Assembly: GCA_002269645.1 (NCBI GenBank) | Contig: NIVC01000293.1 | Coordinates: 62,001 to 126,000, forward strand | DNA length: 64,000 nt | Direction of reading: 5' to 3' | DNA from: Macrostomum lignano | Lineage: Eukaryota | Part shown: positions 128 to 54,674 of the stretch, piece by piece | How the letters are laid out: the number at the start of each line of letters is the position of its first letter | How positions within the stretch are numbered: position 1 is the stretch's first letter | Notes under the pieces: model-generated | What the model saw: only the letters and a program-made list of their open reading frames with translations | Told to the model about the DNA's origin: nothing | Databases searched by the model: none | Translations under genes and position numbers: made by a program

Positions 128-1990
<1,863 letters not shown>

Positions 1991-5462: not shown

Positions 5463-12093
<6,631 letters not shown>

Positions 12094-14990: not shown

Positions 14991-15629
14991 ACACTCTACT
15001 GTCTCACCCTCCCACTCCATTCCCCGTCTCCAATCGCTCTCCATCCAGTTTAAATATTTTCATGCATAGCATATCCGACTCCCTCTCGTGTCTCCCCTTT
15101 GTGAGAATATGTATGAGTTTAACCTGATTTATCGCACCCATCCACATCGCGGCTGTTAACTCCTGCCACTCATCCTAAGTGCCTGATTATATGCAACTCA
15201 AAAATGTATGCCATAAATCATAATTTAAGTACCAAGTCTAACTTAGTGGACTCAGTACTCAGATACTCGTAACATCTACCTGACTTGCTAGTCTTCTGGT
15301 GTTCAATTTTATTTGAATCTTGACTTGTTTGGTGTCGACTTTGTGCCATGCTATAAATTCTTAAGTGTAATTTAATTTGCTTCTAGGATAGACAGTCTGA
15401 TATAAATATTCACAATTGTTTTAATGCGTTTATTTGATGTTAGATTGCTAGTTGCAGGCCTGTCTGTTTTATCTGCTCTTTGAAATAAAAATGCTTACTG
15501 GATAGATGTACTTTTAATTGTCAGCAATTTGTCTTTTTTATCTGTTGCATTGCTTGAAAAATGAGGATAGCTTTACTAAATTGTCTAAACTATATAAATG
15601 TGACAAACTAGTCTAAGCCCTATTCTTCA

Positions 15630-29100: not shown

Positions 29101-29275
29101 GTTTTGACCTTCTTCAAGGACTGCAGTTCTGCTTCGGATCACTCGTGATTTAATTTCGGGGAAAACGCTTTCCGCTAAAGCAAAGTTCCATGGATTTGAA
29201 ATTATGCTATTAGAGATCAATTATATGGAAAGGTAAATAAGCTAGACAGACAGACACACAGACAGACAGATACTA

Positions 29276-29327
<52 letters not shown>

Positions 29328-29359
29328 TCTAAGACAGACAGACAAACAAACAGATACTA

Positions 29360-29404
<45 letters not shown>

Positions 29405-29405
29405 C

Positions 29406-29471
<66 letters not shown>

Positions 29472-31839
29472 TGACATACAGAAAAGCAGGCAGGCAGGAA
29501 GACACAAACAGGCAGACAGACAGACTGACATACAGAAAAGCAGGCAGGCAGGAAGACACAAACAGGCAGACAGACGGGTAGATATTTTTCAAATTGAAAT
29601 TGCAAAGCAACAGCTAAAGAATTGAGACTAATAATGTCATTTGTTTTGGCATTTTAGTTCGTCTCTTACGATGCTTTCAAAAGCAATAATTTTTTTGATT
29701 AAGAAAATTTAACTTAATTTCTTCGCAACAAATGCTTGCTGGGTTTCCGCGTTGATTGAACCAGTCCAGAGTATTTGGCAGATCAATTCGAAAAAAGGTT
29801 GACGAGTAGACCTGTTGCTGTGAAGGACAGAGAAGAGTAGAATTGGCTTCCTTGTATTTTAAGGCCGTGCAGTTTGGCGTTAATAGGAGAACTTTTTTCA
29901 GGAGAGAAAAATGGGAAGGAAATGCAACACAACAGTTCCCATTGCAAGATAGCCAGCACTTGCTCTCATCGAGAGGCGTGGGATTATAAAGGGTGATTGG
30001 GTCGATGAAGACTGACTCTATTTCTGAGTACATGCATGAACTGTACGGCTCATACGGGAAGAATTGGCAGCAGGTTTCTGAAATGCTTGCAATTCAGTCT
30101 TATTATACGAGGTCTGTCTAGGAAGTTTCGCTGACTGGGGAAGGGGGTTGCCAGACGCACCCTCAATTACCCCAGCTGGCACCCATTTTACAGCTGGGTG
30201 AACTGAAGCAATGCAGAATTAAATGTCTTGCTCAAAGGACAAAAATTGTTCCGATTACGTCGAGAATCGAACCCCCGACCTTTCAGCAGGCTACAATCAT
30301 TCGAGGACAAGGTCCGCGGCCTTGTGTGTTGCTACAGGTGGAGACTGTGCTGAGACGGCTGTCTTGAAGGCTGATGAGGATGTCGAAAGACAGCAGTTAG
30401 TTTCTATACTCGTGAGAATAAGAAATTATTAGAAAGCAAAAACGCTTTGAAATTGCACCAAAGTTGCTTTTACAGCTCAGTGATTAAAAGTGTCAGAACT
30501 TTCCGGAGAGCCTTTGTAAGCACAGTGAGTCTATTTTTAACACTATATAGCAGTTTGCTAATATTAAGAAGTAAGCTGGATTCTGTTGGCCAATGTTGAA
30601 AATTTTTAAAAGGAATTGTTATGCTTTTCTTTGAAGGCATACAGCCCACTCAGTCACAATGGTCGCTTTACTCATAGTCATCGGAGGGTCCGCTTCAGGC
30701 TTTGCTTCTTTCATAACTGTGCAATCTGGTTCGAAAACACGGCTCTTGACCTATTAAATACTTTTGAATTCAGACTGCCAGCCATCTTCATCCACAGACT
30801 CTCAGATTTCACTGTCACATATAGAGCGAAATGCTATTGTGCTTATAAATATATGCTAAGACACTTGTACGGTTTCTCAAATTCACTCACAGACTCTCAC
30901 TCCACTCACAGACTCTCACTCTACTCGCAGACTCTCACTCCACTCACAGACTCTCACTCCACTCACAGACTCTCACTCCACTCGCAGACTCTCACTCCAC
31001 TCACAGACTCTCACTCTACTCGCAGACTCTCACTCCACTCACAGACTCTCACTCCACTCGCAGACTCTCACTCCACTCACAGACTCTCACTCCACTCAGA
31101 ATTTCACTCGACTTAGACTCTTAATCCGCTCAGGACTCCAAATCATATAATGAACACTTCAGCACACTCCAAGACACTCAAATTCTACCAACTTTTCAGG
31201 CCCATATCGAAAAACTAACTATACCCTGTAGTAGGAAAGTAAAAATGTCATCTCAAACAAACTTTAAGTTTACGCAAGGACTTTTAAAGGCTACTAACTA
31301 CACCAACAACTATGAGAGGTCCCGAATTTAATGATTAATATTTTATGAACATCGATCCAGTTCCCCAGAGACCATCGAACTCACGCTATAAGCCGCTGAA
31401 ACAGAGCCGAGAACAGTTTCTCCTGTCGGCACCGAATCAAAATATCCAACGGCGAATCCCGTTTTCTTCTATCGGCCTCGCCGCCCTCACCATCCGTGAC
31501 CTTGATCGGATCGGCTCGGCCCACCCACTCGAAAGCGGCTCGAACTTTCTCCAGCTCGCTTCGACACTGGCATTCGCGCATCAGCCTGTCTGTGAAGCTC
31601 TGCCAATCGTCTTCAACAGTTGGTAACAAAGTTGACACAGTGTCGGCGATATGGGCGAAGCTGCTGGGCTGGAAGACGGCCTCCTTGCGCCGGTTACTGG
31701 GGTAAGGCAGCGGCGGCTGCTGGTCAGTCTGCTGCAGCTTGGAGGCAGGGTCAAGACCTTTGTCCAGCTGCAGCTGACGGAGCTCCTCAAGAGTGTAACC
31801 GCTGGAAGGGTCTTTGAATTCGTCGAGGTTGATCTCCAT
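23191..31839 (-). CDS. Hillarin/KY-like transglutaminase-fold protein; exons 31839-31385, 29008-26577, 26357-26190, 25355-25027, 24334-24161, 23373-23191
   Basis: Exons join in phase. Motifs SELEKVRAAFEW, LFQRLIAYAG, GEWRLVDAHWG, YFLTDP, HYPERPEWQLL, repeated beta-sandwich segments, C-terminal LELTCYANP..IHATVMAVLL and SAAAAAFFDW region. Confidence 0.82.
23600..23975. repeat. 31-bp minisatellite (GAATCTACCAGTTTACCTAGAACCTCCTACA), intronic
   Basis: About 12 degenerate tandem units. Confidence 0.9.
24375..24880. repeat. 24-bp minisatellite (GATGGAAGTGGTGTCTGGGTAAGA), intronic
   Basis: About 21 tandem units. Confidence 0.95.
25630..26035. repeat. CT-rich low-complexity tract, intronic
   Basis: About 400 bp of nearly pure pyrimidine on the + strand. 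Confidence 0.9.
29243..29577. repeat. (GACA)n compound microsatellite, intronic
   Basis: GACA runs plus two copies of a ~41-bp unit. Confidence 0.95.
30120..30295 (-). mobile_element. tRNA-derived SINE remnant with CORE-like central domain
   Basis: Minus-strand B-box-like GGTTCGATTC near 30262-30271. Plus-strand CCCATTTTACAGCTGGGTGAACTGAAGC...AAATGTCTTGCTCAAAGG resembles the reverse complement of the MIR/CORE domain. No A box seen. Confidence 0.55.
30885..31100. repeat. 19-bp minisatellite (ACTCACAGACTCTCACTCC), intronic
   Basis: About 11 tandem units. Confidence 0.92.
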
Positions 31840-34800
31840 AGTTTTAGCGCTCAGAATCAGGAGATACCCAGCATGGCAAAGTTGCAAATCCAGCTAGACT
31901 ATAGCTTTATATGTAGGCGGTTATTGTGACCACCGCAGTGCAGCCTTCCCCACTACACCTTCCCTCCCTCCCGATGAATCGCAGCCTATAGCTGCTACAG
32001 CTCAACCAGTCAGTCGGTAAAAAATTGCAGAGCGGCCATTAGCCAGCCCAGTGGAATTCTCGCTGGTTGTCAAGGAGACTCACGATGCAGACAGACGGCA
32101 GGTAGCGGCGGAGGAGGGGAGAGGTTGAGTTGGATGAGCGGACAGGGAGTGAATCGCGGGCGGGCTGCTCAAGCATGGGAAGGGGAAGGGCCTGGGATTC
32201 GCGAGCGTGTTAAGGAGGAGAGGTGGGGAGTCTAGGAAGAGTGAAGAGAAAGAGCTGCTGACGCGGAGCTGGGCCAAGGCCGGATAGAATGCATTAGCAG
32301 CTGCCACTGAAGACGGAAAAATGCTTGAAACAATGGAAGGAGTTTATAGCACGAACTGCAGGTATAAGACGTTGAGTTGCATGGGATAAAGTGCAATTCT
32401 GTAGTGAAGGCAGGCAGCCTTGGGTTGCTCAGACAGGAGTATTTAAAACTTTTTAGAAAACTGACTGAAGGTAAACAGCGCTTACCATGCCTAAAGCATA
32501 TGCCGTGTTTTAATCTATGGCCACCTATTATGTACATAATTATCCTTTGCTGACGGCTGTGATAAGCTCTTTTTATCGTGGCAGATCAAGACTCGCAGAT
32601 TGATGTCAAGCATGATAGATAATTCCGTTAAAGACAAAGGCAGCAGACAGGAGCCGACTGGAACGGGCAATTCAACAATAGGGGACATAAAAGGAAGATG
32701 TTTTTGAAAGGATGTAAAGCGTTGTCTAAAACTGTGTATCTGGTATTCTGCACGTTAAGAACCGAAGTTTAAGCCGTGAAATTTTGCGCCAGTTCTGTCT
32801 AAAATTGGCTTGCTAAGCCAGAGGAGCAAATAATAACTAATACGAGTAATAATTTGAACTGTTTTAAATGAATTTTGTACAAATTTACCAACTGATGTTA
32901 AACCCTTGATTGCGATACTACATGTAAGAAATTAATAGCCACTGCCTGGATTTGTGACAGGAATCTTCACGCGCCGATTGGAATGAGAAATAGCCTGACT
33001 CCAAAAATGAACGCAAAGAACTGCTTATATCCCAATACTTCTACTTCGAGTAGGATTAAACTGTTAAAGCTTGAGGACTTGGCTCGTATTATCAAAATAA
33101 TTTTAACAGCAAACAAATACATCTTAAATGCGAGTCATTTTGATGTTTGATATTTATGAAAAATGGATACTAATTTCACATGTATATTATAAAGCAAACG
33201 GCTTCAGCTTTTGAAGCAAAATACATGCATCCGATAATTACTGCGGTAATTTACTGCAAGAACCATGAAAGATTTTAAAAAGCATTACAAGTGCAATGCA
33301 GGTCAAGTACACATAAAAGTTTTGCTAAGCATCGACTGCTGTCACATTATACGTGTTAAACACATTATAACGCATTCTTCTCATGCTCGCCTATTGCCCG
33401 ATCCAACCCAGGATATCAATTAAGGTCTCTTGCCACCATGAATCATATGACGCCCACCGCACTCTTCCATCCACCACAGCCTCCTTGCTTTCGTTCAAAA
33501 TAACCTAAGCGAAACGCACCCAGTGAAATCCCATTCCTGTAATATATATTTCTCCAAGTCACGTGACATCCCATTTTGATTCCCATTCCATTAACCAATC
33601 AGAGCGAGGCAGATGCCGTCACTTGGCTGCGCAGGTCAAGGGGCAGTTCAATGTCGTTTTTGTTACAAATCATTCGAATTTTATAGAAACGAGCAATTGC
33701 GTGCCTATCAGTCAAGAACTGGTACTCGTACCCCTCCACCCCATTAGAATTCGTGATTTGCTCCCCACTATTTTATCTTGACCAAAAGTTCATTCTGATC
33801 TCCTCCATAGAAACTGTTAATCCGGCCCTCTTCAATTTAATGTTGCTGGTCGATTCCCCAGATCTCAAACTCTCACAAAGAAACCGAAGCCTGTACTGCC
33901 TCGATCCGCACCAGAGCCGAGTGACCCATCTAATTGCCAGCCGTGCCAAATTAAGGCATTTCATTATCTTACTACTTTTGTGAGATCTTTACTCAAGATT
34001 TTGACAATTCCTCTAGATCCTACGCACACTTCAGCTAGCCAGTCTGTGCCTGGGTCCTGGGATATATTCTTAACGGCAGCAAAATACATACAAACTCATT
34101 TGAAGAAGAAATTTTGTTTTAGCCACATCTCTATCGCAGCACCGGAATTCCAGCGGAGATCACTGAGGAAGGCTACGCGACTCCGCGCCCAAGACAATAG
34201 ATTTCCCCTATCGCAAAATCCCATATCCCTATCCCCCCGCTCCAGCATTTAGCTAGACTATCTGACGTTGTCATCGTGAAATCCGATATTAATACGCACT
34301 CAAGATGCTCAAAAGCAATTAGGCTAAAAAACAATTTTGTAAAGCAAGCAAAGATTGATTGTGAGAAATCAGACTTGGCGCTCGGGTCTGACTATCGATA
34401 TATTTTATAAGCCGACGATTGGGGTGGGGTTTGGGTTTTGTACACGCAAGGGCGCAGCCGCACGTTGCAAATAACCCCCCAAACACAACCACGTACAACA
34501 TAAAATATTTAGGTGCATAGAAAGCGCAAACTGTTTTATTGCTTCGATAGGCAGTATAGCACTTGGCCTCTCCAGTGCTTAAGGATTTGTAGTTTTTACG
34601 ATCGTATTGTGTGGTCTGGTTGGAATTGTAATAGAAGGCAACGCAAAGAACATTCACCAAGGTTGCTTGTTAACCTAAAAATTTATGCGTAAAACTTTTC
34701 TATAAAAAATATGCAAATCGTTTGAAACATAAAAAAAACGAGCAACCAAAAATATACTATAACAGGACAGGACCCACAACACAAGTAATAACAATGAAAA

Positions 34801-36386
34801 ATAGCATAAGTATAGATTGGTCCGCCAATCGGAGTTAGTGGCAGCCGATGACTGCCTGCCTTGGGTCCTTGTTTAGGAGTGGGTGCGAGGCAGGGGTTTG
34901 CTGTACGTGGGAGAGGTGGTTGGTGCGTTGTGCAGGAGACTTTTATACCCGTGTTTTATAGCTTTGCGTTGTCTAATCAACTCTCGCTGGCCCAATTTAG
35001 TTCTTTGTATTCCCACCGATAATTGGCAGGAGGTTGTTCACGTGCTGTCTGCAATCATCTGTATTCCTGTGTTTCTTCCTTCGACCAGTCCTATATTGCA
35101 AAACTGACTCAAAGTTAGTACGTGTATATGCAGTTGCATGTAACTAAACTGGATCAGGACGAAAATCCACGCGCATTCTGTGAAAAGTCAAACATTTTTA
35201 AGAGTTAAAAAAACTCAAAATATATCAAAGCCTAGTCAGAAAGTGATACCAGACTAACGCAAAAGCAGAAACCTCACGAACTTAAAAAGCTATTTAAAGG
35301 ATATTTGAGCAAGAAAAACATCGTTATAGCAGCAAAAAAGCCTTGCTAAAAGAATAAGCACATTGGATGATTGAAAATATGTTGAGCTACAACAGATAAA
35401 CTTCATATCAGAACTGCTACAACATTCTCCGCATTGCAACTCGAGATCAAGCTGTTTGAAGTCGAATTCTCTAAGACACCGACCCATGCTGCTGAAAACT
35501 TCAGCAGAGCCCACAGCAGAGCTACACACGGTAAAAAAATCCAAACCAATGCCAGTAACAAGCCGATCCGGGCAATCCATTAACTTCACAGTATCGCTGG
35601 TGCTTAAACTCATCCGGTGCACAGCTGATGGGGTGGCCAGAATCAAGCTGCGTCCTGAGACTGTCACACTACGAGCGTCCTTCACATGATCAGGCAGCTT
35701 CAAGCTCTGCTGCAGCTCAAGCGACTCCAGAGAGCGGCAGTTGACATAGCCGTCACTGAGAATGTACAGCTTCTCCATGTCATGCGTAAGACTCTGTTTG
35801 GCACCGAACTGCACATTCTGGACAGTTTGCAACTTTGCACCCGTCAGGTCAGTCATGATTATAGACATAGACAGATTTTCTTGATCTTTGCCAAGCAGAA
35901 ATATCCTCTTAGTATGGTTTACAAGTCTTCCGGAAATTAATTTGATTCCGTTGTTTGGTATTTGCAATTGGCAGATTACATCATTCAAGTCCATGCTATC
36001 GATACGAAACCACCAATCATTGATATTAAAGTCATTGGCAACAGAAAGAATACAAGAATGAGGAAGGGCATAAAAACCATCCTGCAGTGTAGTGGATATT
36101 GATTGTTTAGAGCAAAATAATCCATCCGTATTAGTGATTACATCAGTGAAAATCCAATCAGAATCCGCACAACACTGCGTTCTCTTAGCTACGCACACTG
36201 CAGATTTCCATCTGCTCTGCAGATCGTCATCAGATTCCTCAGCTTCAGCTGCACGAGTATTTACCGCCTGTTGAAGTCTCTCTATCTGTTGCACACCGCA
36301 GTCAACAATATTGGCCCACTGATTTGTGTTTGGAGCATCTACCATTGACATATTAAACTCCTTTCTCAATCGAAAACTGCTCAATG

Positions 36387-37444
36387 TGAAGTACAGGTGT
36401 CTTGCCTGTGGTTGTCTAGAGGCCTTCAATAGGAACGCTGCCCCGGTGAAGTACAGTTGCTTGAGCTCCTCTGGGAAGTCTCCGGGTTGATCTAGTAGCG
36501 TTGGTAGTGCTGCCACCAGCTTCGCAGAGTCGCAGCCTTCGGTGAGGTGCTGAGCTCGTAGAAGCAAATAACTAAGACGAGAGAAAGAGACTCGCACTTC
36601 GTGCAGATTTAGCAGTTCTCGCGCAGAGGTGCCCACCGTCAGCAGTCCCTGCCGGGCTGGTGCGGGGTGAGAGCGAAAGTGCTAGCTTCGGGCGATCTGA
36701 GCTGGCCTGCTAATTGATAGCAGGAACAATCAGAGGCAGTCACGCGCAAAGTCGGGAGTTTGGAGTTCACTTGAAGCGCAAACTTGGCACACAACTTAGA
36801 GTTCGCTAGAAACGAAACGGAAGGAACGCTAGGAAAGCTTGGAAAGCTAGGAACGCGAGGAACGCTTGTCTGAGCCAAGCCATGAGAGGGGCCGCATTTA
36901 TAGGGAGGATCGATTGCACCATAGCACGAAAGGCCCCCGCTGAGAGTCATAAGTGACTCTGTTGCTATTTTTAGCAACAAACAAGCGGGCCCTGCCTCAG
37001 AGGAGGCAAGGGGGGTCCGGGCGCACGTGATCTCCCCATAAACACGAGCCCAGCGTACAATGATGAAATCATTGCACTTTGGACTAAAGAAGGAAGAGGG
37101 CCTTGTCATGTGACTGACTCACATGACAAGGGGAAACGGCCCACAAGTGAAGGCACTCGTGACCGTGGGACCGGAAAACAGAAAGGCACTCCAAATTTGG
37201 AGATGCCTGACAGAGAACGAAACAGAGGCAGGCCAGACCAAGCTGTCTGGGCACTGCAAAAAGGGAAAACGAGACAAAAGGGGGCAAACGAGGACAAACA
37301 GACAGACAGACAAACGAGCAGAGGACAGGCCAGGGGACAGGCGGGAGGGACAGGCAACTGCCCAGCGGCAGACAGAAACCTGGGGAGAAGGCGAGGGCAA
37401 CAGCTGACTAGTGCGGCGCCTAACTAAACTAGCGACTCACTACA
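36387..37444 (-). mobile_element. Solo-LTR-like insertion, 1058 bp
   Basis: TG...CA termini (TGAAGT...ACTACA), 4-bp TSD AATG at 36383-36386 and 37445-37448, minus-strand TATAAA at 36897-36902 followed by short TC-rich repeats. No internal retroelement ORF. Confidence 0.75.
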
Positions 37445-38028
37445 AATGCGTTTCCTTCAGCATCTGCAGCACTGATTTCAGCCGACAGTTGCTCCACAGA
37501 GCTTAGAGATCTCAGACTCTGCTCCAAATCGGCGATCTTTGAGTCCAGTCTACCGATCACATTTTCTCTGCATTGTTTCACTCTCTCCATGATTGAATCG
37601 AACATCCCAGTGTAAAAAGTCGAGTCCGACGGACTCAGATTCGTCATAGTCCGCAGTGATAGGTTATGTACGACCATGTCTTATCTGATCGGACCCTGAT
37701 CGGACCCTGACTTGTAGACTTTGGAAAGACTGCTATTGGACTCTCTATTTATGGCTACTATCAGTAGTGTTGATTGCGAAGTTTGCTTGATTTAAATAGA
37801 GAATTAAAAATTGTTTTATTTCTTTTTAAGCATTGCAATGAGTTGTTTAACTTTTTTGTTTTTGAAGTTTATTTGTATATAATTATTACAATAGATTACA
37901 ATAAATTAATTAGCAATGATAAATGTACCTATAATGACAAATTATAATTCTTTATACTAAATGTTTCATTACCCAGCCATACCGTACATTTTTTCCAGTC
38001 AAACATTAAAATAGACAGTTATTAAATA

Positions 38029-40233
38029 TTAATCAGAATCTGAGTCAACGACTGTAGGCCGGCTGCCCCTTTTGCACTGCTTTTTGGCTGATAAATCATC
38101 GGCTGTGGCAGCCCGCTTCAATCCTCTGGTCGCTGTAGCAGCGGCAGCTTCAGCATTATTGGTGGCCCGTGCAGCTTTTGCTTGAAGTCGCTTCTGCCTC
38201 GCAACCTCTCTTTCCAATGCGTGCTTCAGGACGTCTTTGATAGCATTCTCAATGTTCTTGTCGCTATGCACAGGTTCCCCCGTTTTAGGGTCCCTTGGAA
38301 AGAGGTCCTGAACGGCATCTGAAAAAAATAATTATCAAGTTCATGTTGTAATGATCACGCTTGTAGATGTCTACTATCAGTAGCAACAACCGGAAATAAA
38401 AAAGAGAAATGAAACTTCAACATAATATGCCCGATTTACTGTAAATCAAAAAGTGTGATCCCCGACCCCGAGTGATTCTGGGTGTGGTGAACTGGAAGCA
38501 AACGAATAGCAATAAATTCCAACAAGCACTCACCAATAAACAACTTTCTGACTCTCTTGAATCCCAGCTGCTCATAGTCGATTATGCCGCACTCTGGAAA
38601 TTCCTCTTGGCAGCGCGGAATACAGCCTTTGCCGCTCCAATTGACCAGACACAGCATCCTCGGCGACAAACACTTGTCCATCATTCGACGGATCGTATCC
38701 GGCAGGGTGCTGCACCGGCAACCACGCAGGCCTGCGATCTGAGTTGTGACATAAAAAGTATCCGGTGAATTGTGAAAACTTTCAATTTTCAATTTTCAAA
38801 AACAAATCCTCAAAAAGTGTCACGCTCTACTTTAAGTAGAAATACATAATCACTTATTTCATTTCCACACTACACATTCGGTTATCTTTATCCACAAAGA
38901 TGACAAACTAAAAAATGAGCTGTCTTCTTTTTAAGTGATTGTGATTCTCTTCCTATCAGTGTTTCGGATATACTTACAAGGCTGGACTGAAGCTGCGTTG
39001 ATGAGAGAAAGTCAATATACTTCTCCCAGGAGTCGATGGGCTCAAAGTATTGGCGACTGCCGCGGGCTGGTCCTGATGTTCCGGAGCCGAGACGTGCGTC
39101 CGCGAGGGAAGAAGCGATGCCCTCCAGAATCGGCAGCACTTTTTGCTCCAGCTGCTTAATTCTTCGGACAGCGTCGCAGCTTCGGCGTGCGCTCAGCATG
39201 GCTAGTATGGCGACTCCGTTCAGCGATTCGGCCGTTGTTCCTTCTGCTGCGAGATACTGCCTGATGTTGTGCATCGCTGCTGGATTTAGTTGGTCGATCC
39301 CAGCGTCAGAATCTGGGTCATCGGCGACATACCGCCGAACTGTTGTCGGCGGCGTGGCTGGCACCGACATCGACGTCGCCGCGACGCTGTCCCGCCGAAC
39401 TGTTGTCGGTGGCGTGGCTGGCACCGACATCGACGTCGCCGCGACGCTGTCCCGCCGAACTGTTGTCGGTGGCGTGGCTGGCACCGACATCGACGTCGCC
39501 GCGACGCTGTCCCGCCGAACTGTTGTCGGCGGCGTGGCTGGCACCGACATCGACGTCGCCGCGACGCTGTCCCGCCGAACTGTTGTCGGCGGCGTGGCTG
39601 GCACCGACATCGACGGTGGCGTACGTGTGTTCAGCGGGTGCCGTTGAGAAGGCAGAAGGGCGTGATTGAAGGCAGGCAGCTCTGGTTGAGCAGCAAGAGC
39701 TGCAACGTCCCCTTCCTGGCTTTCCCTCATCCGGTTTTCGCTCTGCGCCTCATTCTCTTCGTCGGATGTTCTAATGTCCTTTGGTATGAGAGTGGGTGAA
39801 AGAAGCTGAGAAGTGCGAGTGAATGACGGTTAGAGAAAATTGATAATTAAATTTGAAATTGAATAAAAATATTTTCACTTACCCTCATGTTCGTGAATCG
39901 GTTCCGCCGGCCGACATTCACCCTGGGAATGGCGCACAGAATCCCTTCGAGACTCTTTCTTTTAATGCTGATCAAATCCCGAATAAATTTTATAGTCGGG
40001 TCTGTTTCCGTGTTCTCATCAAGTACAATTTGAACTATGCACGCGTCAAACCATTCATTGCCGAAGTCGGCCCTTACTCTAATTGGATTTTTATAAAAGC
40101 GATTTTCTGCGCCTAACTTCTCCCAGTCCTCCACAGTATACTCTTGGTACTCACCAAGAGCTACCTCACTGAACATGAGCTCAATGACCTGCTTGTCGGT
40201 CTCAAAATAAACAATGAATCGGACAGATTCCAT
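38029..40233 (-). CDS. Transposon accessory protein with C-terminal DUF4806/BEN-like region; exons 40233-39883, 39805-38978, 38738-38534, 38318-38029 (~557 aa)
   Basis: Exons join in phase. Motif TIRRMMDKCLS...LVNWSGKG...IDAVQDLFP...IENAIKDVLKHALER resembles DUF4806 proteins that accompany animal EnSpm-like transposases. Confidence 0.72.
39332..39616. repeat. Coding 60-bp tandem repeat (SMSVPATPPTTVRRDSVAAT) x~4.7
   Basis: Units start at 39332, 39392, 39452, 39512, 39572 and are nearly identical. Confidence 0.95.
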
Positions 40234-40544
40234 TGCTGTCTGTCAAATCTAGATGGGAATCGGAACTGGAAAAAAGACTGGATTGACTGTCTTCTATGCA
40301 GGTTGGCATGAGAATATAGCTATAGTTGCGGGAAAGGGATGCAGGAAAATCAAATTCCTCATCCAATCAGCGCAGCTATAGCTGTATTGACCAACCCTCA
40401 CCCATTACTCGACCTCCTCCCCATTCTTCCCTCCCCCTTCCCACTCGGGCCTTGATCCTAAATCAAGCTTCAAAAAATGAAAAATGAAAAATATTAAAAA
40501 TCATTCGAAATGAAAAAAAATTGAGTTGTATTTGCAAAACAAAT

Positions 40545-42785
40545 ATGCCGAAGGAAAAAAAAACCGAGGACGACACGAATCCAAGCAGACAGTTTCAAAA
40601 CTTCCTATCTGAAAGCCGGAAGTCTGCACTACCCATTGAAAATCTACATGCCGATGCAAATATTTTCCCAGCTTGCGCTGAAACCGACCCTGCAGATCGC
40701 GATTTCGAATTCGACTCAGGATTCCTCGCACAGTGCATGAATGCTTTGGTTCTTCCGAGCGAATACGAAGATGACGAAGCCAGAGTAGCTTCTGATGATG
40801 AAGATAGTGAAGACGAGGCAGCGAAGCCCAGCATGGACACTCTAGACGACGAGCTGCTCGTCCTTTTCTTGCTGCACAACCTGTCTCACAGGGCCATGCA
40901 GTTCCTCTTAAATGCACTTCACAGTCGTGGATTGCCTGTTTCCAAATCCCTTTACTTATTAACAACGAAGGATGGGAAAAAGAAAGTCCTTAAATACCCA
41001 ATGGGGACAGGCGACTTTGCATACTTAGGTATTGCCTCGAATATCGGCTACCTCCTGAGCAAAAATCTACTGAGATTGGGCCAAGCATCTACTCTTCCGA
41101 ACGGTTCTAAAGGGTTCGAAGTCGACATCAAAATTGGCATTGACGGGATGCCAGTTTACAGGGCATCGAACTATAGTGCCTGGCCCATCTTGGCGCTAAT
41201 CTCTGGATTCGACAGACCCGTCCCGATCGGGCTGTTTGCTGGAATAGGTGAGTGACGAAAAAACTAAGCGATATTTCCCACTTTAAATCCCACATCCGAT
41301 TTAAATCCCACGCCTACCAAATCCCACACTCATTATATTTTCACACTTATTAAAATTATGTAAATAAAATTCGAAATTTAAATTTTTATCCTATTTGAAT
41401 CTCAGGAAAGCCGCCTCTAGAAGACTACATAGCCGAATTTTGCAAGGAGGCTGCGGAACTGATGTCGGACTTCAAGATGATTGAAGGAGTGAACATCAAG
41501 ATCCGAAAACTAGACTTCATCTGCGATGCGCCAGCTCGCTCATTCATCTGCAAGACACTGGGGCACAATTCTCATGCCGGCTGTTTCTATTGTAGAAGTA
41601 TAGGAAAGACCGTCGACAGACGAGTTGTGTACCCGACAACAGCGGGAGAGTCGCGCACGGCTGAAGATTATCGCACAGGAAGGTAGGAAGATTACTTGCT
41701 AGTTAATAAAAAAGTAATCTCCCTGCGAGAATCGCCCATAATATCTTTAAGTGAATCGCCCATAATCTCCACATTTCTTCCGTCTATCTCCACATAATCC
41801 TCAACATTTCAGTGAGTCAAACCAGCGCGCTGGGCCCAGTCCCCTGATGCAACTGCCGGGATTGGAGTTTCCGCAGTGCATTCCACCGGACTATATGCAT
41901 CTGGTCTGCCTAGGAACAGTGCGGAAGCTGTTCCACTTTCTGTTTGCTACGGATGACGGCCGCCACTGCAAACTTCGGCCCAGCGACATAGCAGCACTAT
42001 CAGTCGAAGTACAAAAGGTCGCTCCGTTCACACCATCCGAATTCCAACGACGACCTCGTCGGATTGATCGGGAGTTGTCTCATTTTAAGGCGTCAGAGTT
42101 GAAAAACTTTGTTCTGTATTTCGGCCCGGTTATCTTTCGGCGATTTCTTCCCGTCCTCCTGTACAAAAATTTCCTGCTTCTACAATTTGCAATATATGTG
42201 TTCATGACGCCAGAGTTATTATCTCATCCCGAGATTTTTCGCTACGCCGCAGCTGCCCTAACCATGTTTGTCAGCGACGCCCATAAGCTGTACGGAAACA
42301 GTGTCATGAGTCACAACACTCACGTGCTGCTGCACCTTCCGGAATTTGTTCGTTCCTTTGGTAGCTTGAGCAATTTCTGCGCCTTCCCCTTTGAGAACTA
42401 TTTGTCGCACCTAAAAAAGCGACTACGAGTAACTCGCTTCACCACAGCACATTTGCTGGCACAAATGCTGAACGTGCGCGAAATGCTGACCACGAACCCA
42501 GCTTCATCTCTGCGCTACAGTCCAAAGCCGCCTAACAAGTGCTGCGTGATTGGAGACAACATAGTGCGTATTTCAGCAGTCCATGGCAATGGAGAAGTCA
42601 CAGGAGTGATTCTCCAATTTAATGGTGGCCTGTACGAGTACCCATACACATCGGAGCTCCTGCGCATAGGGTACTACTGTGACTCCCGTCAAACAATTAC
42701 CGGAATGCCAAAGAAGAAGTGCATAATGCTACCGCAACCAATAGGCTGCCTTGTTGTGCCACTGGTGTCAGAGGATTTGAATTGA
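40545..42785 (+). CDS. EnSpm/CACTA-like DDE transposase; exons 40545-41247, 41406-41682, 41813-42785
   Basis: Exons join in phase. Motifs IGIDGMP, WPIL, FICDAPARSF..GH...GCFYC, PDYMHLVCLG, FKASELKNFVLY, NTHVLLHL, FPFENYL. No stop or frameshift seen. Confidence 0.9.
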
Positions 42786-44914
42786 ACATCGAATATTATT
42801 CTCATATGCTCGTATTGACCATACTCTCAATTAGATTAGGTGCACATAAGCTTGCAGTTATAAACTCGTGAGCTGTAAAGGTCATAAAGTATTGAAATAA
42901 ACGCATTCGTAATTTAGGTGCACCTAACCTAATGCGAAAAGTCATTTGTAATAATATTTATAAGTAATCATACTTCTAGTTATTTTCACGACCAATTCCA
43001 TGCTATTCTACCTGGACTATTCTAACCTGGACTGCAAGCCTCAGAATTTCCTCATGTGGGCCTCACTGGGGTTTCGGTGCACAAGATGCGGGGCAGAGAC
43101 CAAGTTGGGGCAGGGAAGAGAGGGGAAGACAGGAAAGGCAGTGAACAATGTGCAGTGAATTTAATTCCAAGTTATTTTATTCAGGGCGACCCATTTCATT
43201 CCTTGCTCTTTTCATACTTTGAAGTATGCTCTTTATTGTTCTAGACAAGTGTACGGCTTGTCAAAAAGCAAATTCTCCTGTTTGTTAGTTTAAATTTCTA
43301 TTTTTCTTCTTGCAACAATGCAAATTGCAATCCAATGTTCCCGCCTCTCGTATCTGGGGCTCTCCGCGGCCAGCCGGTTCGCAATGGGCAGGTTGGGGGA
43401 CCTCCCGCCTTCACTATCTCACTGACGGGCAGTTTTTTTAACTGACGGGCAAACAATTACTCCAGGTTTCAATTTGCTGGGTTGTTTGCCCCAAGTTTCA
43501 ATCTCTGACTCTGAATTTTGGTTGCAAGTCCAGATTGCAAAGTATAGAAGTTTGGTCTTAGAAAAGGATTCCAAAGCACCAGGTGGGGCCGTGGGGGCGG
43601 CAGAGGCAAAGACCTGGCCCTGCAATTCCCAGCGCTCTGCTTTTCGGTTCAACCTAGGAGCAACTGCACCCAGTGCCCAGTGGTGCAGTAAACCAAATAA
43701 TTCTATATATCAATTCTAGATTAAGTTTGATATATAGAATTCTTTGAGTAAACCCAGCCCCAGTTCTGCGGCGCCTTTCGGCCTGGGCATATAATTCTAG
43801 ATATAGTTTGAAACGAGTATCTAGAATGCTATGGCCTGGGTCACAGGGGCAATAAATCACTTGTACGAGCACTGGGTTTCCACACAAGGCCTTCACAGCG
43901 CAGCCCTTATCTGCTCGCAGGCAGATAAGGGCTCATGGGGAGAGATATTTAAGAGCGGGGAACAACGGAGCCCTGGCTTTATGTAACAATTCTGTAACAA
44001 TTCTTACATGTAACAATGTAACAGTTATGTAACACTTTAGCTCGTATAAACAGAAAATCTTTTGCTCGTTTTGATCTAAATATTGCAGATGGTGTGGTGT
44101 GTTGCTCCATAGACTCATATAGTAGCATCCGGACTGTAAATTATTTTTTTCGTTTTTTTATTACATGGGAGCAACTTCTCCCCATTATGAAGCTAGCTTA
44201 AATTTTCGGGCCTCAAGGAGTCTATTTTTGCTCGTTCAGTCAGTCAGTCACTCACTCACCCAAGTCACTCTCTAACTCGCTCATCCAATCAGTTACTCAC
44301 TCACTCATTCTATATACGGTATTTACATGTAAGGCGACCTAGCGGGCTGGCCTAGCGGAACTCTTTGCCTCCATTTGGCTCCCCAATTTCCTCTTACCGG
44401 TAAAACCAAACTACGGGTTGATTGTCTAGGGGTTTTTGCATTGCATAGGGGTTTTTGTCTTTGTCCATGGACTCCTAGATATACTAGGTATTACTATATC
44501 TAGGAGTCCATGCTTTGTCTCGTCTCGAAGTATTTCTTGGTTTATTGTGTCTTATTTTTCCGTGGGCAGTGGGACCATTTTTCCACTATTTGCAAAAAAG
44601 CAAGTCCAGGCAGGCAGTGCGGGATGCGCAGTCTAGTTATATTTCTTGGTCTGTGCCCCTTGGGCATGCCCCTCTAAAGTATTGTGAACAAAGAAGGATC
44701 TGTGCTTCAAATAAAGATCAAGGCCAGCCAGGCTGTAAATTAAAAATGGCCATGTTTGAATTGTTCGAAGAACACCTGGATGAGGCAGGCGGAAGGGAAG
44801 CAGGATTGTTTATATCATTTTTATTGCTTGTTTATTCAGTATTTATGACAGTACATAACTTTATTGCCGGTGGTAAAGAACGAGAGTCGCAATTTAGTCG
44901 CAAGTTTGGGGAGA

Positions 44915-45690
44915 GATGAGGGTGAGACTGTGAGATAGATGAGGGTTAGACTGTGAGATAGATGAGGGTGAGACTGTGAGATAGATGAGGGTGAGACTGT
45001 GAGATAGATGAGGGTGAGACTGTGAGATAGATGAGGGTGAGACTGTGAGATAGATGAGGGTGAGACTGTGAGATAGATGAGGGTGAGACTGTGAGATAGA
45101 TGAGGGTGAGACTGTGAGATAGATGAGGGTGAGACTGTGAGATAGATGAGGGTGAGACTGTGAGATAGATGAGGGTGAGATTGTGAGATAGATGAGGGTG
45201 AGACTGTGAGATAGATGATGGTGAGACTGTGAGATAGATGAGGGTGAGACTGTGAGATAGATGAGGGTGAGACTGTGAGATAGATGAGGGTGAGACTGTG
45301 AGATAGATGAGGGTGAGACTGTGAGATAGATGAGGGTGAGACTGTGAGATAGATGAGGGTGAGACTGTGAGATAGATGAGGGTGAGACTGTGAGATAGAT
45401 GAGGGTGAGACTGTGAGATAGATGAGGGTGAGACTGTGAGATAGATGAGGGTGAGACTGTGAGATAGATGAGGGTGAGACTGTGAGATAGATGAGGGTGA
45501 GACTGTGAGATAGATGAGGGTGAGACTGTGAGATAGATGAGGGTGAGACTGTGAGATAGATGAGGGTGAGACTGTGAGATAGATGAGGGTGAGACTGTGA
45601 GATAGATGATGGTGAGACTGTGAGATAGATGATGGTGAGACTGTGAGATAGATGATGGTGAGACTGTGAGATAGACATGAAGGTGAGACT
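44915..45690. repeat. 23-bp minisatellite (GAGATAGATGAGGGTGAGACTGT) inside the transposon
   Basis: About 33 almost identical units. Confidence 0.97.
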
Positions 45691-46544
45691 GAGATATCGA
45701 TGCTGCGTGAACTGTCAGAATATCCTCTGCTGGAACTCATACTCAATCTCTCTACTCTTATACTCTAATAAGAGTAGTCTGGGCTCGTTAAAATAATTTT
45801 TCCTACTGGAACTGGTGTTACCTCAACGGTCTACTGACAGTAGCACATCAAGAATGCTTTAATTTTTATTCGCCGTTTTTAGTTTGAATTAAATCAGATG
45901 TCAAAGGACTTGTTACGGACTCACAAAATGAGTCAGGACAGAAAGGACTGAAATCGGACCCCCCAAAATTACGCTGAAAATAGAACAAAATATCCTCGAA
46001 AAACACCGAAAAAGACATTAACAGTCGGTTTAAAGTCTTAATTGACAAAAAAATTTTTTTTGGAAATCAGCTCATGGGGGACCAATCCGAGTCCGATCAG
46101 GGTCCGCCGGACTCAACCTTTTACACTGGGATGTCAGCTGCATCAGCCCTGTCACTTTCCAGATCAAACTGGGCCCCTCTGGTGTTTTTGATTAGCTGGG
46201 ACACTTTGGCCAATGACTCATCGGTTTCTATTTTGATGGCGCTCAATTGCAGCTGGAACTGTTTCTCATCTTTCTTCAAGTGCTCAGCACACAGAGGACC
46301 TTCCCAGTAGAGCCCATGACCGGAAGCTTGACTGTAGCAACTCCTCAGGCTGCACTGCTTGTCCTGCTCAGAGGTTTCATCGTTCGGTAGATCGCTATGT
46401 GTGCTGCTAGTTGCCATGGCATGCATTAAAGAAAAGTGCATATCATAAACTGTGCTATCATAGGTAGCTAACTTTCAGAGAAGCTTATCTACACATATCA
46501 ATTATAGTTAGGGATTGCCAAAACTTCAGTCTGTTCGATTCCTA

Positions 46545-47500
46545 TAAAAAAGAAAAAAGAGCTAGAAATCTTATTGTCAGAAGTTAAAGCTACCATCAAA
46601 GAACTGAAGCAGAAAGAGGCACCAGGAGAAGACAACAGCAAGACATAACTCATTGAAGATGGTGGGGAAATCACAGCGAATGTGCTGCACAAGCTTTGCA
46701 ACAAGAACCTGAAGACAAGAGTCGCTAAATTAGTTGGCAGAAAGTATTCCCATCACCACCATACCAAAAGACTAACAGTACATGTAAAACCATCAAGCTG
46801 TCAGTCACACGTCAAGTGATAATAAAAGTAATTTTGAAAAGGATCACACCCAAGATAGAAGTTCTAAGCGAGGGCCAAGCTGGGTTTAGAAGAAGATTCT
46901 TCTTCTCCTTGAGAATTCTAAGCAAGAAAGCAAGATGATAGCAGTCCGAGGAGGGACTCGGAGAATTAGTTGGTGAATGTGAAGGTTAATCGTGTACATT
47001 TGGAACACGTGTATGAGAAGCTTTACCTACCTTGTATCGGGAATAGAGAAGACAATGGAAAGTCAGACATGGAAATTTGGATACGAAATGAAAGAGCTAA
47101 AAGACCGCTGGCAAAACTGGACAACATTTGTATCGAGCAAGAAAACATTCACATGAAAAATAAAATTGATGCGATCGGTAGTAATGGCAAATCTTCTTCG
47201 AATGATGATGAAGACCTACAGAAAAATGCCGTGCCAAGCATTTTCGGGGAAAGGAGGTGGAAGGCTGTGTAGGTCTGATCAAGAGAAGGAATTTCCGCTT
47301 CTTCGGGCATGTTGCGAAAAGCGATGGAGTGGTTGATGGTGGTGTTAAGGGAAAGATGGGCAGAGGTAAGCCGCAAGGTGACTGGACAGGCAATCTGAAG
47401 GACTGGGGAGTGAACAGATGCTGCAGCTGAGCAAGATGGCCTTGGATCGAAGGAGGTGGAGAGTCGCTGTCAAGAAATGGGGTGCATCAACGACTATAAT
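46545..47500 (+). mobile_element. Degenerate, internally deleted RTE-clade LINE
   Basis: Broken-frame RT-related motifs in correct order: ILLSEVKATIKELKQKEAPGEDN, VLHKLCNK, QAGFRR, NGKSDMEIWIR, LIKRRNFRFFGHV, DRRRWR. Confidence 0.82.
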
Positions 47501-49208: not shown

Positions 49209-50117
49209 CTAGGAGATGCAGAGGCGCACTAAAACGCGATGGGTGCAGGACAAGCTGAGAAATAACAGCAAAGTGCTCGTCGACTCCCTGCTAAAACTGC
49301 AGCAACGAACCGACTCGAGGCGGTAATTTATACCACAGTTCTGGCAACGAGTGAAATAATTCGCACCTAACGACACCAACTCAATTACCTTAATCTCTCG
49401 TCCGTTGCCATCCAGAATTTTCACACTTCCATCACTATCGCACACAGCCAGAAATTCTGAGCAGAGTTCAGCTACACATCTAATATTCGAGCTACCGCTC
49501 TGATACAGCTTCGAGAATTGATGAGTTCTAAGACTCATCCGATATACTGCTGACGAGGTGGTGATGATCAAACTGCGGTTTCGATGCACGATGCTATGAG
49601 CCTCTTTAATATCATGCGATATTTTTATCTTCGTCTGCAGCTCGCATGTTTCCAAGGACATGAACTGGACACCACTATGTCCGAGAATGTACAGCTTATC
49701 CATGTCGTGAGTCATGCCGAGTACACTTCCAAGCTGCACATGCTGAATAGTGCGAAGCTGAGTTCCCGCCAGATCAGTCACTGTCAAAGACTGGCTGCCA
49801 TTGAGCAGGAAACACTGCTGCAGATGATTCACCAATTCGCCAGAAGCAACTTCATACTGAGTGTTCCATCGACTGAGAGAAACACCATCAGAGTTGAAAA
49901 CTAAAACACATCTAGGATACGGACCTGAATTGCAAAAGACGAATACACAAGCGCTTGGTAGGGCCTGAAACCCAGGCTGACACGTCTTAGAGAGCGACTG
50001 ACCAGAGTAAAAGTATCCATCAGTCTTGTAGCACAAACCGACGAAAGCAATTGATAATCTAACATCCATGTGGATGACGGATAGACTTGGTTGGCACGTC
50101 TTAAATCTCTCTACCAT
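49209..50117 (-). CDS. Family copy B: propeller-only paralogue, 302 aa
   Basis: Shares GFQALPS, LVNHLQQ, VTDLAGTQLR, THDMDKLYIL with copies C/E. ATG in GCCATGG context 13 nt after a CTAAT-polyT-AG acceptor. Confidence 0.78.
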   Translation of the reverse strand: MVERFKTCQPSLSVIHMDVRLSIAFVGLCYKTDGYFYSGQSLSKTCQPGFQALPSACVFVFCNSGPYPRCVLVFNSDGVSLSRWNTQYEVASGELVNHLQQCFLLNGSQSLTVTDLAGTQLRTIQHVQLGSVLGMTHDMDKLYILGHSGVQFMSLETCELQTKIKISHDIKEAHSIVHRNRSLIITTSSAVYRMSLRTHQFSKLYQSGSSNIRCVAELCSEFLAVCDSDGSVKILDGNGREIKVIELVSLGANYFTRCQNCGINYRLESVRCCSFSRESTSTLLLFLSLSCTHRVLVRLCIS

Positions 50118-50519
50118 GGCAATAGAAGAGCTTGAAAAAAATTAGACAAAATTTTTGTCGATTTTGTCAATTGTCTATTAGCGCGGATGCTAATTACGAG
50201 CTATAATAGATGGTACTATGATATCTGGGACCACTAAGTATACTAACGTCCGTTGACAAGTGTGGCAATTGTTCACATAGTTGAAAACTAATTCCTCATT
50301 GATTATTTCTTCGTGAAAAGTTATAACCACGCGCTTAATATTACAATCACCTTGCAAGAAAAATTATGGGGTTTTATTGTAGGTGTTGCAATTAGCAACG
50401 TAAAGACATGCTCCTAGTCTTTGTTAATTTTAAACGGCGTCAGTAGTGAGCTTTTTCGAAATGATACCTTACTAGATTAAAGTAAAAGTCTCTTAAAAAA
50501 CGGCACAACAGCGATTGGA

Positions 50520-53997: not shown

Positions 53998-54435
53998 CTA
54001 GTGGGCTGACTGACTTTTGACATCAACCGAAAGTTTCTCTACACAGCTGAGAGACCTCTGGATCTGCTCCATATCTGCAATATTCGAGTTTAATCTACCA
54101 AGCACTTTCTCCCTGCACTCATTCACTCTTGCAATGACAGCCTCAAACAGGTCAGCCGTCTCAGCCCGGTCAGTCGTCAGCTCGAATTGAGCAGCTTTAG
54201 CGCGGTTGGTGAGCTGCGAAGCACCAGCGAGTATCGAATCGGTTTCATTCTTAATGCTGGCGAACCGACTTTTAAACTGCTCTTTGTCACTCTCGAGATG
54301 CTCAGCGCAGAGAGGCCCGGCCCAATAGTGTCCGCGGCCCGAAGCCGGGCTCTGGCAGTGGCTGAGGCTGCACAGTCGGCTTGCTGGTCGATCCTGCTCG
54401 TCGCTTGTTGCGCTTGATTTACGTTTTGTTGCCAT
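53998..54435 (-). pseudogene. Family copy D: N-terminal half only (zinc motif + coiled coil), stop after SVDVKSQSAH
   Basis: CSLSHC...YWAGPLCAEH and TDRAETADLFEAVIARVNECREKVLGRL match the family, then homology ends abruptly. Confidence 0.72.
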
Positions 54436-54674
54436 CGTTAAAGCATATATGGGCCCAGTTTTCAAAAAAGCAGTCCATGATATTGTCGTGTCAATCAAAA
54501 AACAAACTTTCAACCAGATTTTCCAAAAAATTGTCGGTACTTGTCACTTCATAATTTTCCTACACATTCACAGTTCTTAACCAGAAAGCAAACATAAAAT
54601 AATTGAATTAATTTAAGCAAAACAAAGAACTGGTTCAGTCTGCTTAAAAAATGTAAGTAAACGCAGAGACATTA

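What the first reader, a model, noticed from the sequence alone, without database searches (positions are those of the whole stretch)
35290..46417. One gene copy hit by two independent clean insertions, with an otherwise open 512-aa frame
Seen: excising 37606-46130 (AT TSD) and 36387-37444 (AATG TSD) gives 287+159+1093 = 1539 nt with no stop or frameshift. The two insertion sites are only ~160 bp apart in the coiled-coil-coding region. Inference: both events are recent and may be polymorphic, or the site is an insertion hotspot tolerated because of paralogue redundancy.
Basis: seen in the sequence. Interest (0 to 1): 0.7.

Follow-up and report, generated by a model that had tools for sequence, protein, structure and literature searches.

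The report
Gene copy broken by two transposons
One of three duplicated copies of a flatworm-only gene in the Macrostomum lignano genome has been interrupted by two separate mobile-element insertions, which is an ordinary step in the decay of spare gene copies after genome duplication.

Summary
Removing 37606-46130 and 36387-37444, plus one copy of each target-site duplication (AT, AATG), leaves a 1539-nt open frame of 512 aa on the minus strand.

The window is Macrostomum lignano assembly Mlig_3_7, contig NIVC01000293.1:62001-126000. Two other copies of this region in the same assembly (NIVC01000254.1, NIVC01000829.1) carry the gene uninterrupted, with exact empty sites for both insertions.

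- **Insertion 1 (8525 bp):** an apparently intact autonomous DNA transposon of the CACTA/Mirage/Chapaev (Tnp2) kind, with 12-bp perfect terminal inverted repeats, a 2-bp duplication and an open three-exon transposase.
- **Insertion 2 (1058 bp):** non-coding, TG...CA ends, 4-bp duplication. Probably a solo LTR, but unproven.
- **The gene:** belongs to a family found only in M. lignano, with a helical N-terminal half and a beta-propeller. It has no Pfam family.

Both insertions look young. They lie in a 566-bp tract that is 100% identical to one empty copy. Redundancy comes mainly from the species' three subgenomes, not only from the tandem paralogues. An insertion hotspot is not supported (P about 0.06). 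Polymorphism could not be tested.

Large indels between subgenome copies are already documented for this species, so the finding is real but ordinary.

The parts
46131..46417 (-). Piece 1 of gene A: CDS nt 1-287 (aa 1-95 plus 2 nt). Carries the N-terminal Cys/His motif and the start of the helical region. Alternative in-frame ATGs lie at 46426 and 46441.
37606..46130 (.). Insertion 1: 8525-bp autonomous DNA transposon of the CACTA/Mirage/Chapaev (Tnp2) kind. Absent from both sister copies.
37606..37617 (+). Left terminal inverted repeat CCCAGTGTAAAA. It is 12 bp perfect and continues imperfectly for about 35 bp. The AT duplication copy is at 37604-37605.
46119..46130 (-). Right terminal inverted repeat, the reverse complement of the left one. 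The AT duplication copy is at 46131-46132.
40545..42785 (+). Transposase gene of insertion 1, antisense to gene A. Three exons (40545-41247, 41406-41682, 41813-42785) joined by GT-AG introns, open, about 650 aa. It shows D...D...C(2)C...H(3)H...E motifs.
38888..40233 (-). Two ORFs of unknown function inside insertion 1 (38888-39730, with a 60-nt x 4.7 repeat at 39332-39615, and 39847-40233). Possibly a second element gene.
44914..45702 (.). Minisatellite of 23-nt period, 34 copies, inside insertion 1.
37445..37605 (-). Piece 2 of gene A: 161 nt between the two insertions, including one copy of each duplication. 100% identical to L001 and 98.8% to L002.
36387..37444 (.). Insertion 2: 1058-bp non-coding element with 5'-TG...CA-3' ends and no terminal inverted repeat or poly(A). 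The AATG duplication is at 36383-36386 and 37445-37448. Probable solo LTR.
35290..36386 (-). Piece 3 of gene A: CDS nt 443-1539 including the stop codon. Covers the end of the helical region and the whole beta-propeller.

Best explanation
Gene A is one of three subgenomic (homeologous) copies of an intronless, Macrostomum-restricted gene. The gene encodes a small Cys/His motif, a long helical region and a C-terminal beta-propeller. In this copy only, two unrelated mobile elements landed 159 nt apart in the helical-region coding sequence. The first is an 8.5-kb autonomous cut-and-paste transposon of the CACTA/Mirage/Chapaev (Tnp2 transposase) kind, which made a 2-bp AT duplication. The second is a 1.06-kb TG...CA element that made a 4-bp duplication, most likely a solo LTR left after LTR-LTR recombination of a retrotransposon. 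Either insertion truncates the protein, so this copy is an insertional pseudogene. It is tolerated because at least one sister copy (L002) is still open. Both insertions occurred after the three copies separated and are young. Shown: the insertions, duplications, empty sites, open joined frame and intact transposase. Inferred: the solo-LTR nature of insertion 2, the order and age of the events, and the loss of function. Sub-confidences: two real insertions into one of three copies about 0.9; insertion 1 of the CACTA/Mirage/Chapaev kind about 0.85; insertion 2 a solo LTR about 0.55.
For: - **Source:** the window equals NIVC01000293.1:62001-126000 of M. lignano Mlig_3_7.
- **Empty sites:** L001 (NIVC01000254.1) and L002 (NIVC01000829.1) are colinear with the window at 93-98% and carry both empty sites. 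HSPs overlap by exactly 2 nt and 4 nt at the sites, and the site sequences are shown.
- **Joined frame:** open, 512 aa, 97-98% identical in DNA to the annotated sister proteins P0005 and P0024.
- **Insertion 1:** perfect 12-bp inverted repeats that occur only at its two ends. A subterminal CTGATCGGAC motif sits in inverted orientation at both ends. The spliced transposase is open. It matches P0023 at BLASTP 9e-36 over the region where P0023 hits Pfam Transposase_21 at 8e-15. The C(2)C and H(3)H motifs and a 2-5 bp duplication are as described for this clade (PMC12730594).
- **Insertion 2:** TG...CA ends and a 4-bp duplication, with no inverted repeat, tail, tRNA or Rfam match. LTR retrotransposons make up 21% of this genome (PMC5730564).
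- **Youth:** 0 differences from L001 over 566 bp spanning both sites, against 33 in the remaining 1031 nt (Fisher 8e-7).
- **Redundancy:** about 85% of this genome exists in three paralogous copies that differ mainly by indels (PMC10733133). The L002 copy is open and has 15 non-synonymous: 10 synonymous private changes (P = 0.025 against neutral). The window copy has 13:4.
- **Not an assembler quirk:** an ML2-assembly gene model (P0026) runs through piece 3, insertion 2, insertion 1 and piece 1 in the same order.
Against: - No raw reads were available, so the junctions are not verified read by read. ML2 and Mlig_3_7 share the same PacBio data (PMC5730564).
- The transposase itself gets no direct Pfam hit. 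Membership is transitive, and the termini start CCCAGTG, not the usual CA...
- No second copy of insertion 2, and no full-length retrotransposon carrying it, could be found.
- The 566-bp identical tract could come from Pilon polishing with multi-mapping reads.
- Substitution counts are small, and the family evolves fast anyway (dN/dS 0.38 between paralogues C and E).
- The L001 sister copy is itself frameshifted, so the gene may be dispensable rather than merely buffered.
Confidence: 0.85

Rival explanations
1. This copy of A was already evolving without constraint (a silent or dispensable copy) before the elements arrived. The insertions would then be consequences of pseudogenisation, not its cause.
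For: Private changes of the window copy in the 3' 1031 nt are 13 non-synonymous: 4 synonymous, as expected under neutrality. Yet the insertion-bearing tract shows zero divergence, so most of those changes predate the insertions. The L001 copy is independently frameshifted, with 14:2 private changes. dN/dS between the window copy and L001 is 1.1.
Against: The joined frame has no stop or frameshift over 1539 nt. Counts are too small to separate 13:4 from the 15:10 of the open L002 copy. The family's baseline dN/dS is high (0.38). Mosaic recombination among the copies blurs the lineages.
Confidence: 0.35
2. The site is an insertion hotspot: local sequence or chromatin attracts mobile elements.
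For: Two unrelated elements lie 159 nt apart. Two of the three window-specific insertions in about 16.6 kb fall inside one 1.5-kb CDS (P about 0.02 to 0.06).
Against: The two elements use different integration chemistry and different target sequences (AT versus AATG). The clustering is only marginal. After a first knock-out, a second hit in the same gene is neutral, whereas hits in neighbouring live genes are purged. Neither sister copy has any insertion there.
Confidence: 0.07
3. Assembly artefact: transposon sequence was wrongly joined into the gene when a repeat-rich neopolyploid genome was assembled.
For: Mlig_3_7 has only 64% error-free bases by REAPR (PMC5730564). 93% of read pairs multi-map (PMC10733133).
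Against: Chimeric joins do not create complete elements with matched inverted repeats and perfect duplications of exactly the bases that are single in the empty sites. A different assembler (ML2) produced the same order.
Confidence: 0.03
4. The interrupted copy still makes protein because both elements are removed from the transcript as introns.
For: Canonical GT...AG pairs within 40 nt of the insert boundaries can restore an open frame in 80 of 1890 combinations. These include a consensus GTGAGT four nucleotides into insertion 2.
Against: That many in-frame combinations is about what chance gives. The transcript-based annotation calls this gene at the two uninterrupted loci only (Mlig017407 g1 and g2), and the 90% cluster has just those two members. 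An 8.5-kb intron would be atypical next to the 130-160-nt introns seen here.
Confidence: 0.03
5. The insertions are ancestral to all three copies and were later excised precisely from the other two.
For: None specific. Cut-and-paste elements can excise.
Against: It would need four independent footprint-free losses, including a 1-kb non-TIR element that has no excision mechanism. Transposons of this class usually leave footprints. Both sister sites are exact.
Confidence: 0.02

Closest known systems
CACTA(EnSpm)/Mirage/Chapaev (CMC) superfamily of cut-and-paste DNA transposons (Tnp2 transposase, Pfam PF02992)
   Same: Insertion 1 has terminal inverted repeats, a short (2-bp) target duplication, subterminal repeats and minisatellites, and a large size with extra ORFs. 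Its transposase shows DGMP...CDAPA...CxxC...HxxxH...FPFE blocks and is homologous to a PF02992-positive protein (PMC12730594).
   Different: There is no direct Pfam hit. The termini begin CCCAGTG rather than CAC/CA. Placement among the Mirage, CACTA or Chapaev lineages was not resolved, and no transposition has been shown.
Solo LTRs of Ty3/Mdg4-type retrotransposons of M. lignano (PMC12801592, PMC5730564)
   Same: Insertion 2 has TG...CA ends, a 4-bp duplication, about 1 kb length, no coding capacity and no inverted repeat or tail. It sits in a genome that is 21% LTR retrotransposon.
   Different: No parent element or second copy was found. No canonical heat-shock element. The class assignment rests on end structure alone.
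Divergence of the three subgenomes of neopolyploid M. lignano by indels (Zadesenets et al. 2023, PMC10733133)
   Same: Three paralogous contigs differ by 2-6% in substitutions and mainly by large insertions and deletions. One copy of a gene is disabled while another stays open.
   Different: This is a single resolved locus, with both elements, their duplications and their empty sites identified. It also shows a mosaic pattern that suggests exchange between copies.
Coiled-coil plus beta-propeller proteins such as COP1 or TRIM-NHL
   Same: The predicted architecture of the A/C/E family is a small N-terminal Cys/His motif, a long helical region and a C-terminal propeller. The best fold matches are COP1 and other WD40 propellers.
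   Different: No RING, B-box, WD40 or NHL Pfam match. TM-scores are only 0.3-0.5 on a medium-confidence model. Relatives were found only in M. lignano.

Membership tests
CMC (CACTA/Mirage/Chapaev) DNA transposon: insertion 1 | Terminal inverted repeats flanked by a 2-5 bp target-site duplication | tested here: met
   12-bp perfect repeats extending imperfectly to about 35 bp, and an AT duplication that is single in two empty sites.
CMC (CACTA/Mirage/Chapaev) DNA transposon: insertion 1 | [quoted passage not shown] | tested here: met
   The spliced 650-aa product reads IDGMP ... CDAPAR ... GCFYC ... HVLLHLPE ... FPFEN, aligned with the same blocks in P0023. The motifs were read from the sequence, not scored by a curated model.
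CMC (CACTA/Mirage/Chapaev) DNA transposon: insertion 1 | Significant match to Pfam Transposase_21 (PF02992) | tested here: inconclusive
   The direct scan gives no hit. The link is transitive: BLASTP 9e-36 to P0023, which scores 8e-15 on PF02992 over the aligned region.
CMC (CACTA/Mirage/Chapaev) DNA transposon: insertion 1 | Termini 5'-CA...TG-3' (true of most families) | tested here: not met
   The termini are CCCAGTG...CACTGGG. The source describes this feature as usual, not universal.
CMC (CACTA/Mirage/Chapaev) DNA transposon: insertion 1 | Multiple copies in the genome, or demonstrated mobility | tested here: inconclusive
   Related M. lignano proteins exist at 85-86% identity (P0010, P0021). 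A 98% one (P0006) may be the same locus in another assembly. The genome could not be searched by DNA.
Solo LTR: insertion 2 | 5'-TG...CA-3' ends and a 4-6 bp target-site duplication | tested here: met
   TGAAG...CTACA with AATG on both sides and a single copy in the empty sites.
Solo LTR: insertion 2 | The same sequence occurs as paired LTRs around gag/pol elsewhere in the genome | not testable with these tools
   No nucleotide search of the M. lignano genome was available. A protein search with its ORFs found nothing. No copy was found in the 120 kb held.
Solo LTR: insertion 2 | Lacks the features of other classes (inverted repeats, poly(A) or simple-repeat tail, tRNA-like head) | tested here: met
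   Only 5 of the first 6 end bases match in inverted orientation. No tail, no tRNA and no Rfam match.
Insertional pseudogene of a homeologous gene copy | Uninterrupted orthologous or paralogous copies with exact empty sites | tested here: met
   L001 and L002.
Insertional pseudogene of a homeologous gene copy | Loss of expression or of full-length product from the interrupted copy | not testable with these tools
   Indirect only: no annotated protein exists for this locus, while both sister loci are annotated.
TRIM-NHL / COP1-like proteins: the gene family | Recognisable RING or B-box and NHL or WD40 repeats | tested here: not met
   No Pfam family passes threshold for A, C, E or ten distant relatives. 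There is only a generic propeller fold resemblance.

The most novel reading that the evidence does not exclude
Insertion 1 may be a currently mobile, autonomous CACTA/Mirage-like transposon in the laboratory line DV1. Its transposase is intact, its ends and duplication are perfect, and it inserted after a tract that shows zero divergence. The same locus would then also record very recent sequence exchange between supposedly isolated subgenomes of M. lignano. In that case the insertions may be polymorphic among lines, and the element could serve as a native tool for insertional mutagenesis or transgenesis in this model flatworm.
Probability: 0.3. Interest if true: 0.4.

Novelty: new member of a known kind. 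Interest (0 to 1): 0.2.

Why it matters
The finding gives a cleanly resolved example of how redundant gene copies are lost in a young polyploid animal genome. Three copies of one gene sit in three different states: open, frameshifted and transposon-broken. It also points to an apparently intact native DNA transposon in a model flatworm where transposon-based transgenesis has been difficult. It does not reveal a new kind of biological system.

Tried and rejected
- **Repeat search of the whole window:** swamped by satellites and gave nothing for the finding.
- **Pfam scans:** no usable hit for the gene pieces, the paralogues or the ORFs of insertion 1.
- **Exact look-ups of chimeric junction ORFs:** 35290-36636 and 46121-46441 were searched to find filled alleles in other public assemblies. 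They are not on record.
- **Last homology search:** I used a concatenation of insertion 2 ORFs and the junction ORF to find other copies. It returned only the known sister protein.
- **LTR paper supplements:** searched for the ends of insertion 2, but no supplement text is held.
- **Possible fourth copy of the region:** I tried to reach it through P0004 and the 302-aa neighbour. The 344-kb contig ends 1.7 kb after the P0004 gene, and the neighbour is annotated on one contig only.
- **Literature search for the gene identifier:** nothing found.
- **PDB sequence searches with the extra ORFs of insertion 1:** only low-complexity chance hits.
- **Rfam and tRNA scans of 34500-47000:** empty.
not pursued, because at 45% amino-acid identity synonymous sites are saturated. 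I compared the three subgenomic copies instead.
- No evidence for it, since the gene is a hypothetical protein of a free-living flatworm. No restricted step arose.
Full report
**The observation.** On the minus strand the gene lies in three pieces: 46131-46417, 37445-37605 and 35290-36386. The 8525-bp insert (37606-46130) begins CCCAGTGTAAAA and ends with its reverse complement, and it is flanked by AT on each side. The 1058-bp insert (36387-37444) begins TG, ends CA, and is flanked by AATG on each side. Each piece translates without stops in one frame. Joining the flanks with one copy of each duplication gives 1539 nt, which is 512 codons plus a stop with no internal stop. In-frame ATGs also lie 3 and 8 codons upstream.

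**Where the window comes from.** A paralogue used as query found only Macrostomum lignano proteins. The window's TIPIN protein is encoded exactly on contig NIVC01000293.1 of assembly GCA_002269645.1 (Mlig_3_7). The 21,032 nt fetched around it are identical to the window, which places the window at 62001-126000 of that contig.

**Sister copies and empty sites.**
- One hit, P0005, is the uninterrupted join of the three pieces. Its cluster mate P0024 is a 512-aa version.
- Their loci, L001 (NIVC01000254.1) and L002 (NIVC01000829.1), are colinear with the window's minus strand at 93-98% identity over more than 20 kb.
- At the two sites the alignments overlap by exactly 2 nt and 4 nt.
- The sister sequences read ...GCTGACATGTTCG... 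and ...GAAACGCATTGAGCAG..., that is, the joined flanks with one AT and one CATT.
- Both inserts are therefore true insertions in the window's copy, each with a target-site duplication.
- According to PMC10733133, about 85% of the M. lignano genome is present in three paralogous copies ("subgenomes"). These differ by 2.2% in substitutions and mainly by indels. These three contigs fit that picture.

**Insertion 1.**
- Its inverted repeats are perfect for 12 bp and recognisable for about 35 bp. The 12-mer occurs nowhere else in the window.
- A subterminal motif, CTGATCGGAC, occurs twice near the left end and once, inverted, near the right end.
- On the plus strand, antisense to gene A, three ORF blocks match transposase-like proteins.
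- Joined by two canonical GT-AG introns (41248-41405 and 41683-41812), the blocks give an open product of about 650 aa.
- That product aligns at 9e-36 with P0023 over the region where P0023 matches Pfam Transposase_21 (Tnp2) at 8e-15.
- It shows the D, D, C(2)C, H(3)H and E blocks given for the CACTA/Mirage/Chapaev clade, which makes 2-5 bp duplications (PMC12730594).
- It has no direct Pfam hit, and its termini start CCC rather than CA.
- The element also carries minus-strand ORFs of unknown function, a 60-nt repeat and a 23-nt x 34 minisatellite.
- I read it as an autonomous, apparently intact member of that superfamily.

**Insertion 2.** It has no inverted repeat beyond TG.AGT, no tail and no ORF with relatives. 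It has no tRNA or Rfam match and no other copy in the 120 kb available. TG...CA ends with a 4-bp duplication are the signature of an LTR, and LTR retrotransposons make up 21% of this genome (PMC5730564). A solo LTR is the best reading, but the parent element was not found.

**The gene.**
- The window holds a tandem cluster on the minus strand: A; a C-terminal fragment (49209-50117); C (50520-52028); an N-terminal fragment (53998-54513); and E (57409-58920).
- A is about 45% identical to C and E.
- No Pfam family matches.
- A profile search of 1.84 billion representative proteins found 20 relatives. All 14 that I looked up are M. lignano proteins, often in triplets on three contigs.
- A medium-confidence model of paralogue C (pLDDT 62) has a long helical N-terminal half and a beta-propeller. 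It resembles COP1 and other WD40 propellers only generically.
- Aligned to paralogue C, the first site falls inside predicted helix 83-137. The second falls at the junction between that helix and helix 141-156.

**Timing and selection.**
- The three copies form a mosaic. Upstream of the gene the window matches L002. From 58 nt upstream of the ATG to CDS nt 508 it is identical to L001. Further on it matches L002 or neither copy.
- The identical tract of 566 bp contains both sites. The remaining 1031 nt of CDS has 33 substitutions and one indel against L001 (Fisher 8e-7).
- A conversion or crossover across the sites would have copied or erased the inserts. Both insertions are therefore younger than that exchange, with divergence since then at most about 0.5% (95% bound).
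- One caveat applies. The assembly was polished with multi-mapping short reads (PMC5730564), which could create such a tract.
- The L001 copy has a 1-nt deletion at CDS nt 1290, giving 474 aa.
- The L002 copy is open.
- Private changes, non-synonymous: synonymous, are 13:4 in the window copy, 14:2 in L001 and 15:10 in L002. Only L002 departs from neutrality (P = 0.025).
- Pairwise dN/dS is 0.5-1.1 among the A copies and 0.38 between C and E.
- The pattern fits one retained copy and two decaying ones. The numbers are too small to say whether relaxation preceded the insertions.

**Hotspot claim.** Against both sister copies the window has three private insertions in about 16.6 kb of shared sequence: the two discussed here and a 213-bp segment. 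A closest pair within 160 bp has P about 0.06, and two of the three inside the CDS has P about 0.02. Because a second hit in a dead gene is neutral, this is not evidence for targeting.

**Misassembly.** No reads could be examined. Complete elements with matched ends and exact duplications argue strongly against a chimeric join. A gene model from the earlier ML2 assembly (P0026) runs in order through the antisense of piece 3, insertion 2, insertion 1 with its transposase, and the antisense of piece 1. A second assembler therefore built the same structure, although from the same PacBio reads (PMC5730564).

**Verdict.** The finding is real and is now explained. It is an insertional pseudogene of one subgenomic copy of a lineage-specific gene in a transposon-rich neopolyploid. 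This kind of difference is already described genome-wide for the species. Two side points are mildly interesting: the apparently intact native transposon, and the hint of recent exchange between subgenomes.

Noticed in passing
window 45910-46476 joined with 37445-37605 and 36165-36386 (CDS nt -58 to +508): This tract is 100% identical to the L001 sister copy, while L002 differs from both at 14 sites in it and the rest of the CDS differs from L001 by 3.2%. The cause is either recent gene conversion between subgenomes or a short-read polishing artefact.
   Followed up: partly
L001 10001-11425 and L002 10001-11539: The sister copies are not equivalent. L001 has a 1-nt deletion at CDS nt 1290 that replaces the last 80 or so residues (annotated as 474 aa).
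   Followed up: yes
window 49209-50117 and 53998-54513 (minus strand): C-terminal (302 aa) and N-terminal (171 aa) fragments of the same gene family lie between the intact paralogues. The tandem cluster therefore also contains partial copies. L002 has 2.8 kb extra at window 50118-50120 that includes a copy of the N-terminal fragment.
   Followed up: partly
window 11836-46387 (plus strand): UniProt A0A1I8HDR6 (P0026, 2465 aa, 'Swi3 domain-containing protein') is a chimeric ML2 gene model. It strings together TIPIN, antisense ORFs of several genes, both insertions and the transposase. It also causes TIPIN and the transposase to share one 90% protein cluster.
   Followed up: yes
window 34533-34745; 32510-32514; 46477-46554: Further structural differences between the three copies: a 213-bp window-only segment downstream of gene A; a 1.3-kb segment present only in L001 and L002; and a segment of about 240 bp present only in L001, 125 nt upstream of the A start. 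None shows clean duplications or inverted repeats on inspection.
   Followed up: partly
window 12303-15127 and 8459-8833: A large satellite with a 15-nt period (about 2.8 kb) produces spurious 900-aa ORFs. A shorter related array lies 3.8 kb upstream.
   Followed up: no
window 1321-1563 and 29244-29511: Long (CTGT)n-type microsatellites lie in opposite orientation about 27.7 kb apart. They are reported by the tool as an inverted repeat pair but are simple sequence, not element ends.
   Followed up: no
L004 (NIVC01001178.1, positions 1-13210): A neighbouring family member (P0004 cluster, Mlig017959 g1-g4) is annotated on four contigs, not three. The 344-kb contig ends 1.7 kb after it, so a possible fourth representation of the region could not be examined.
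   Followed up: partly
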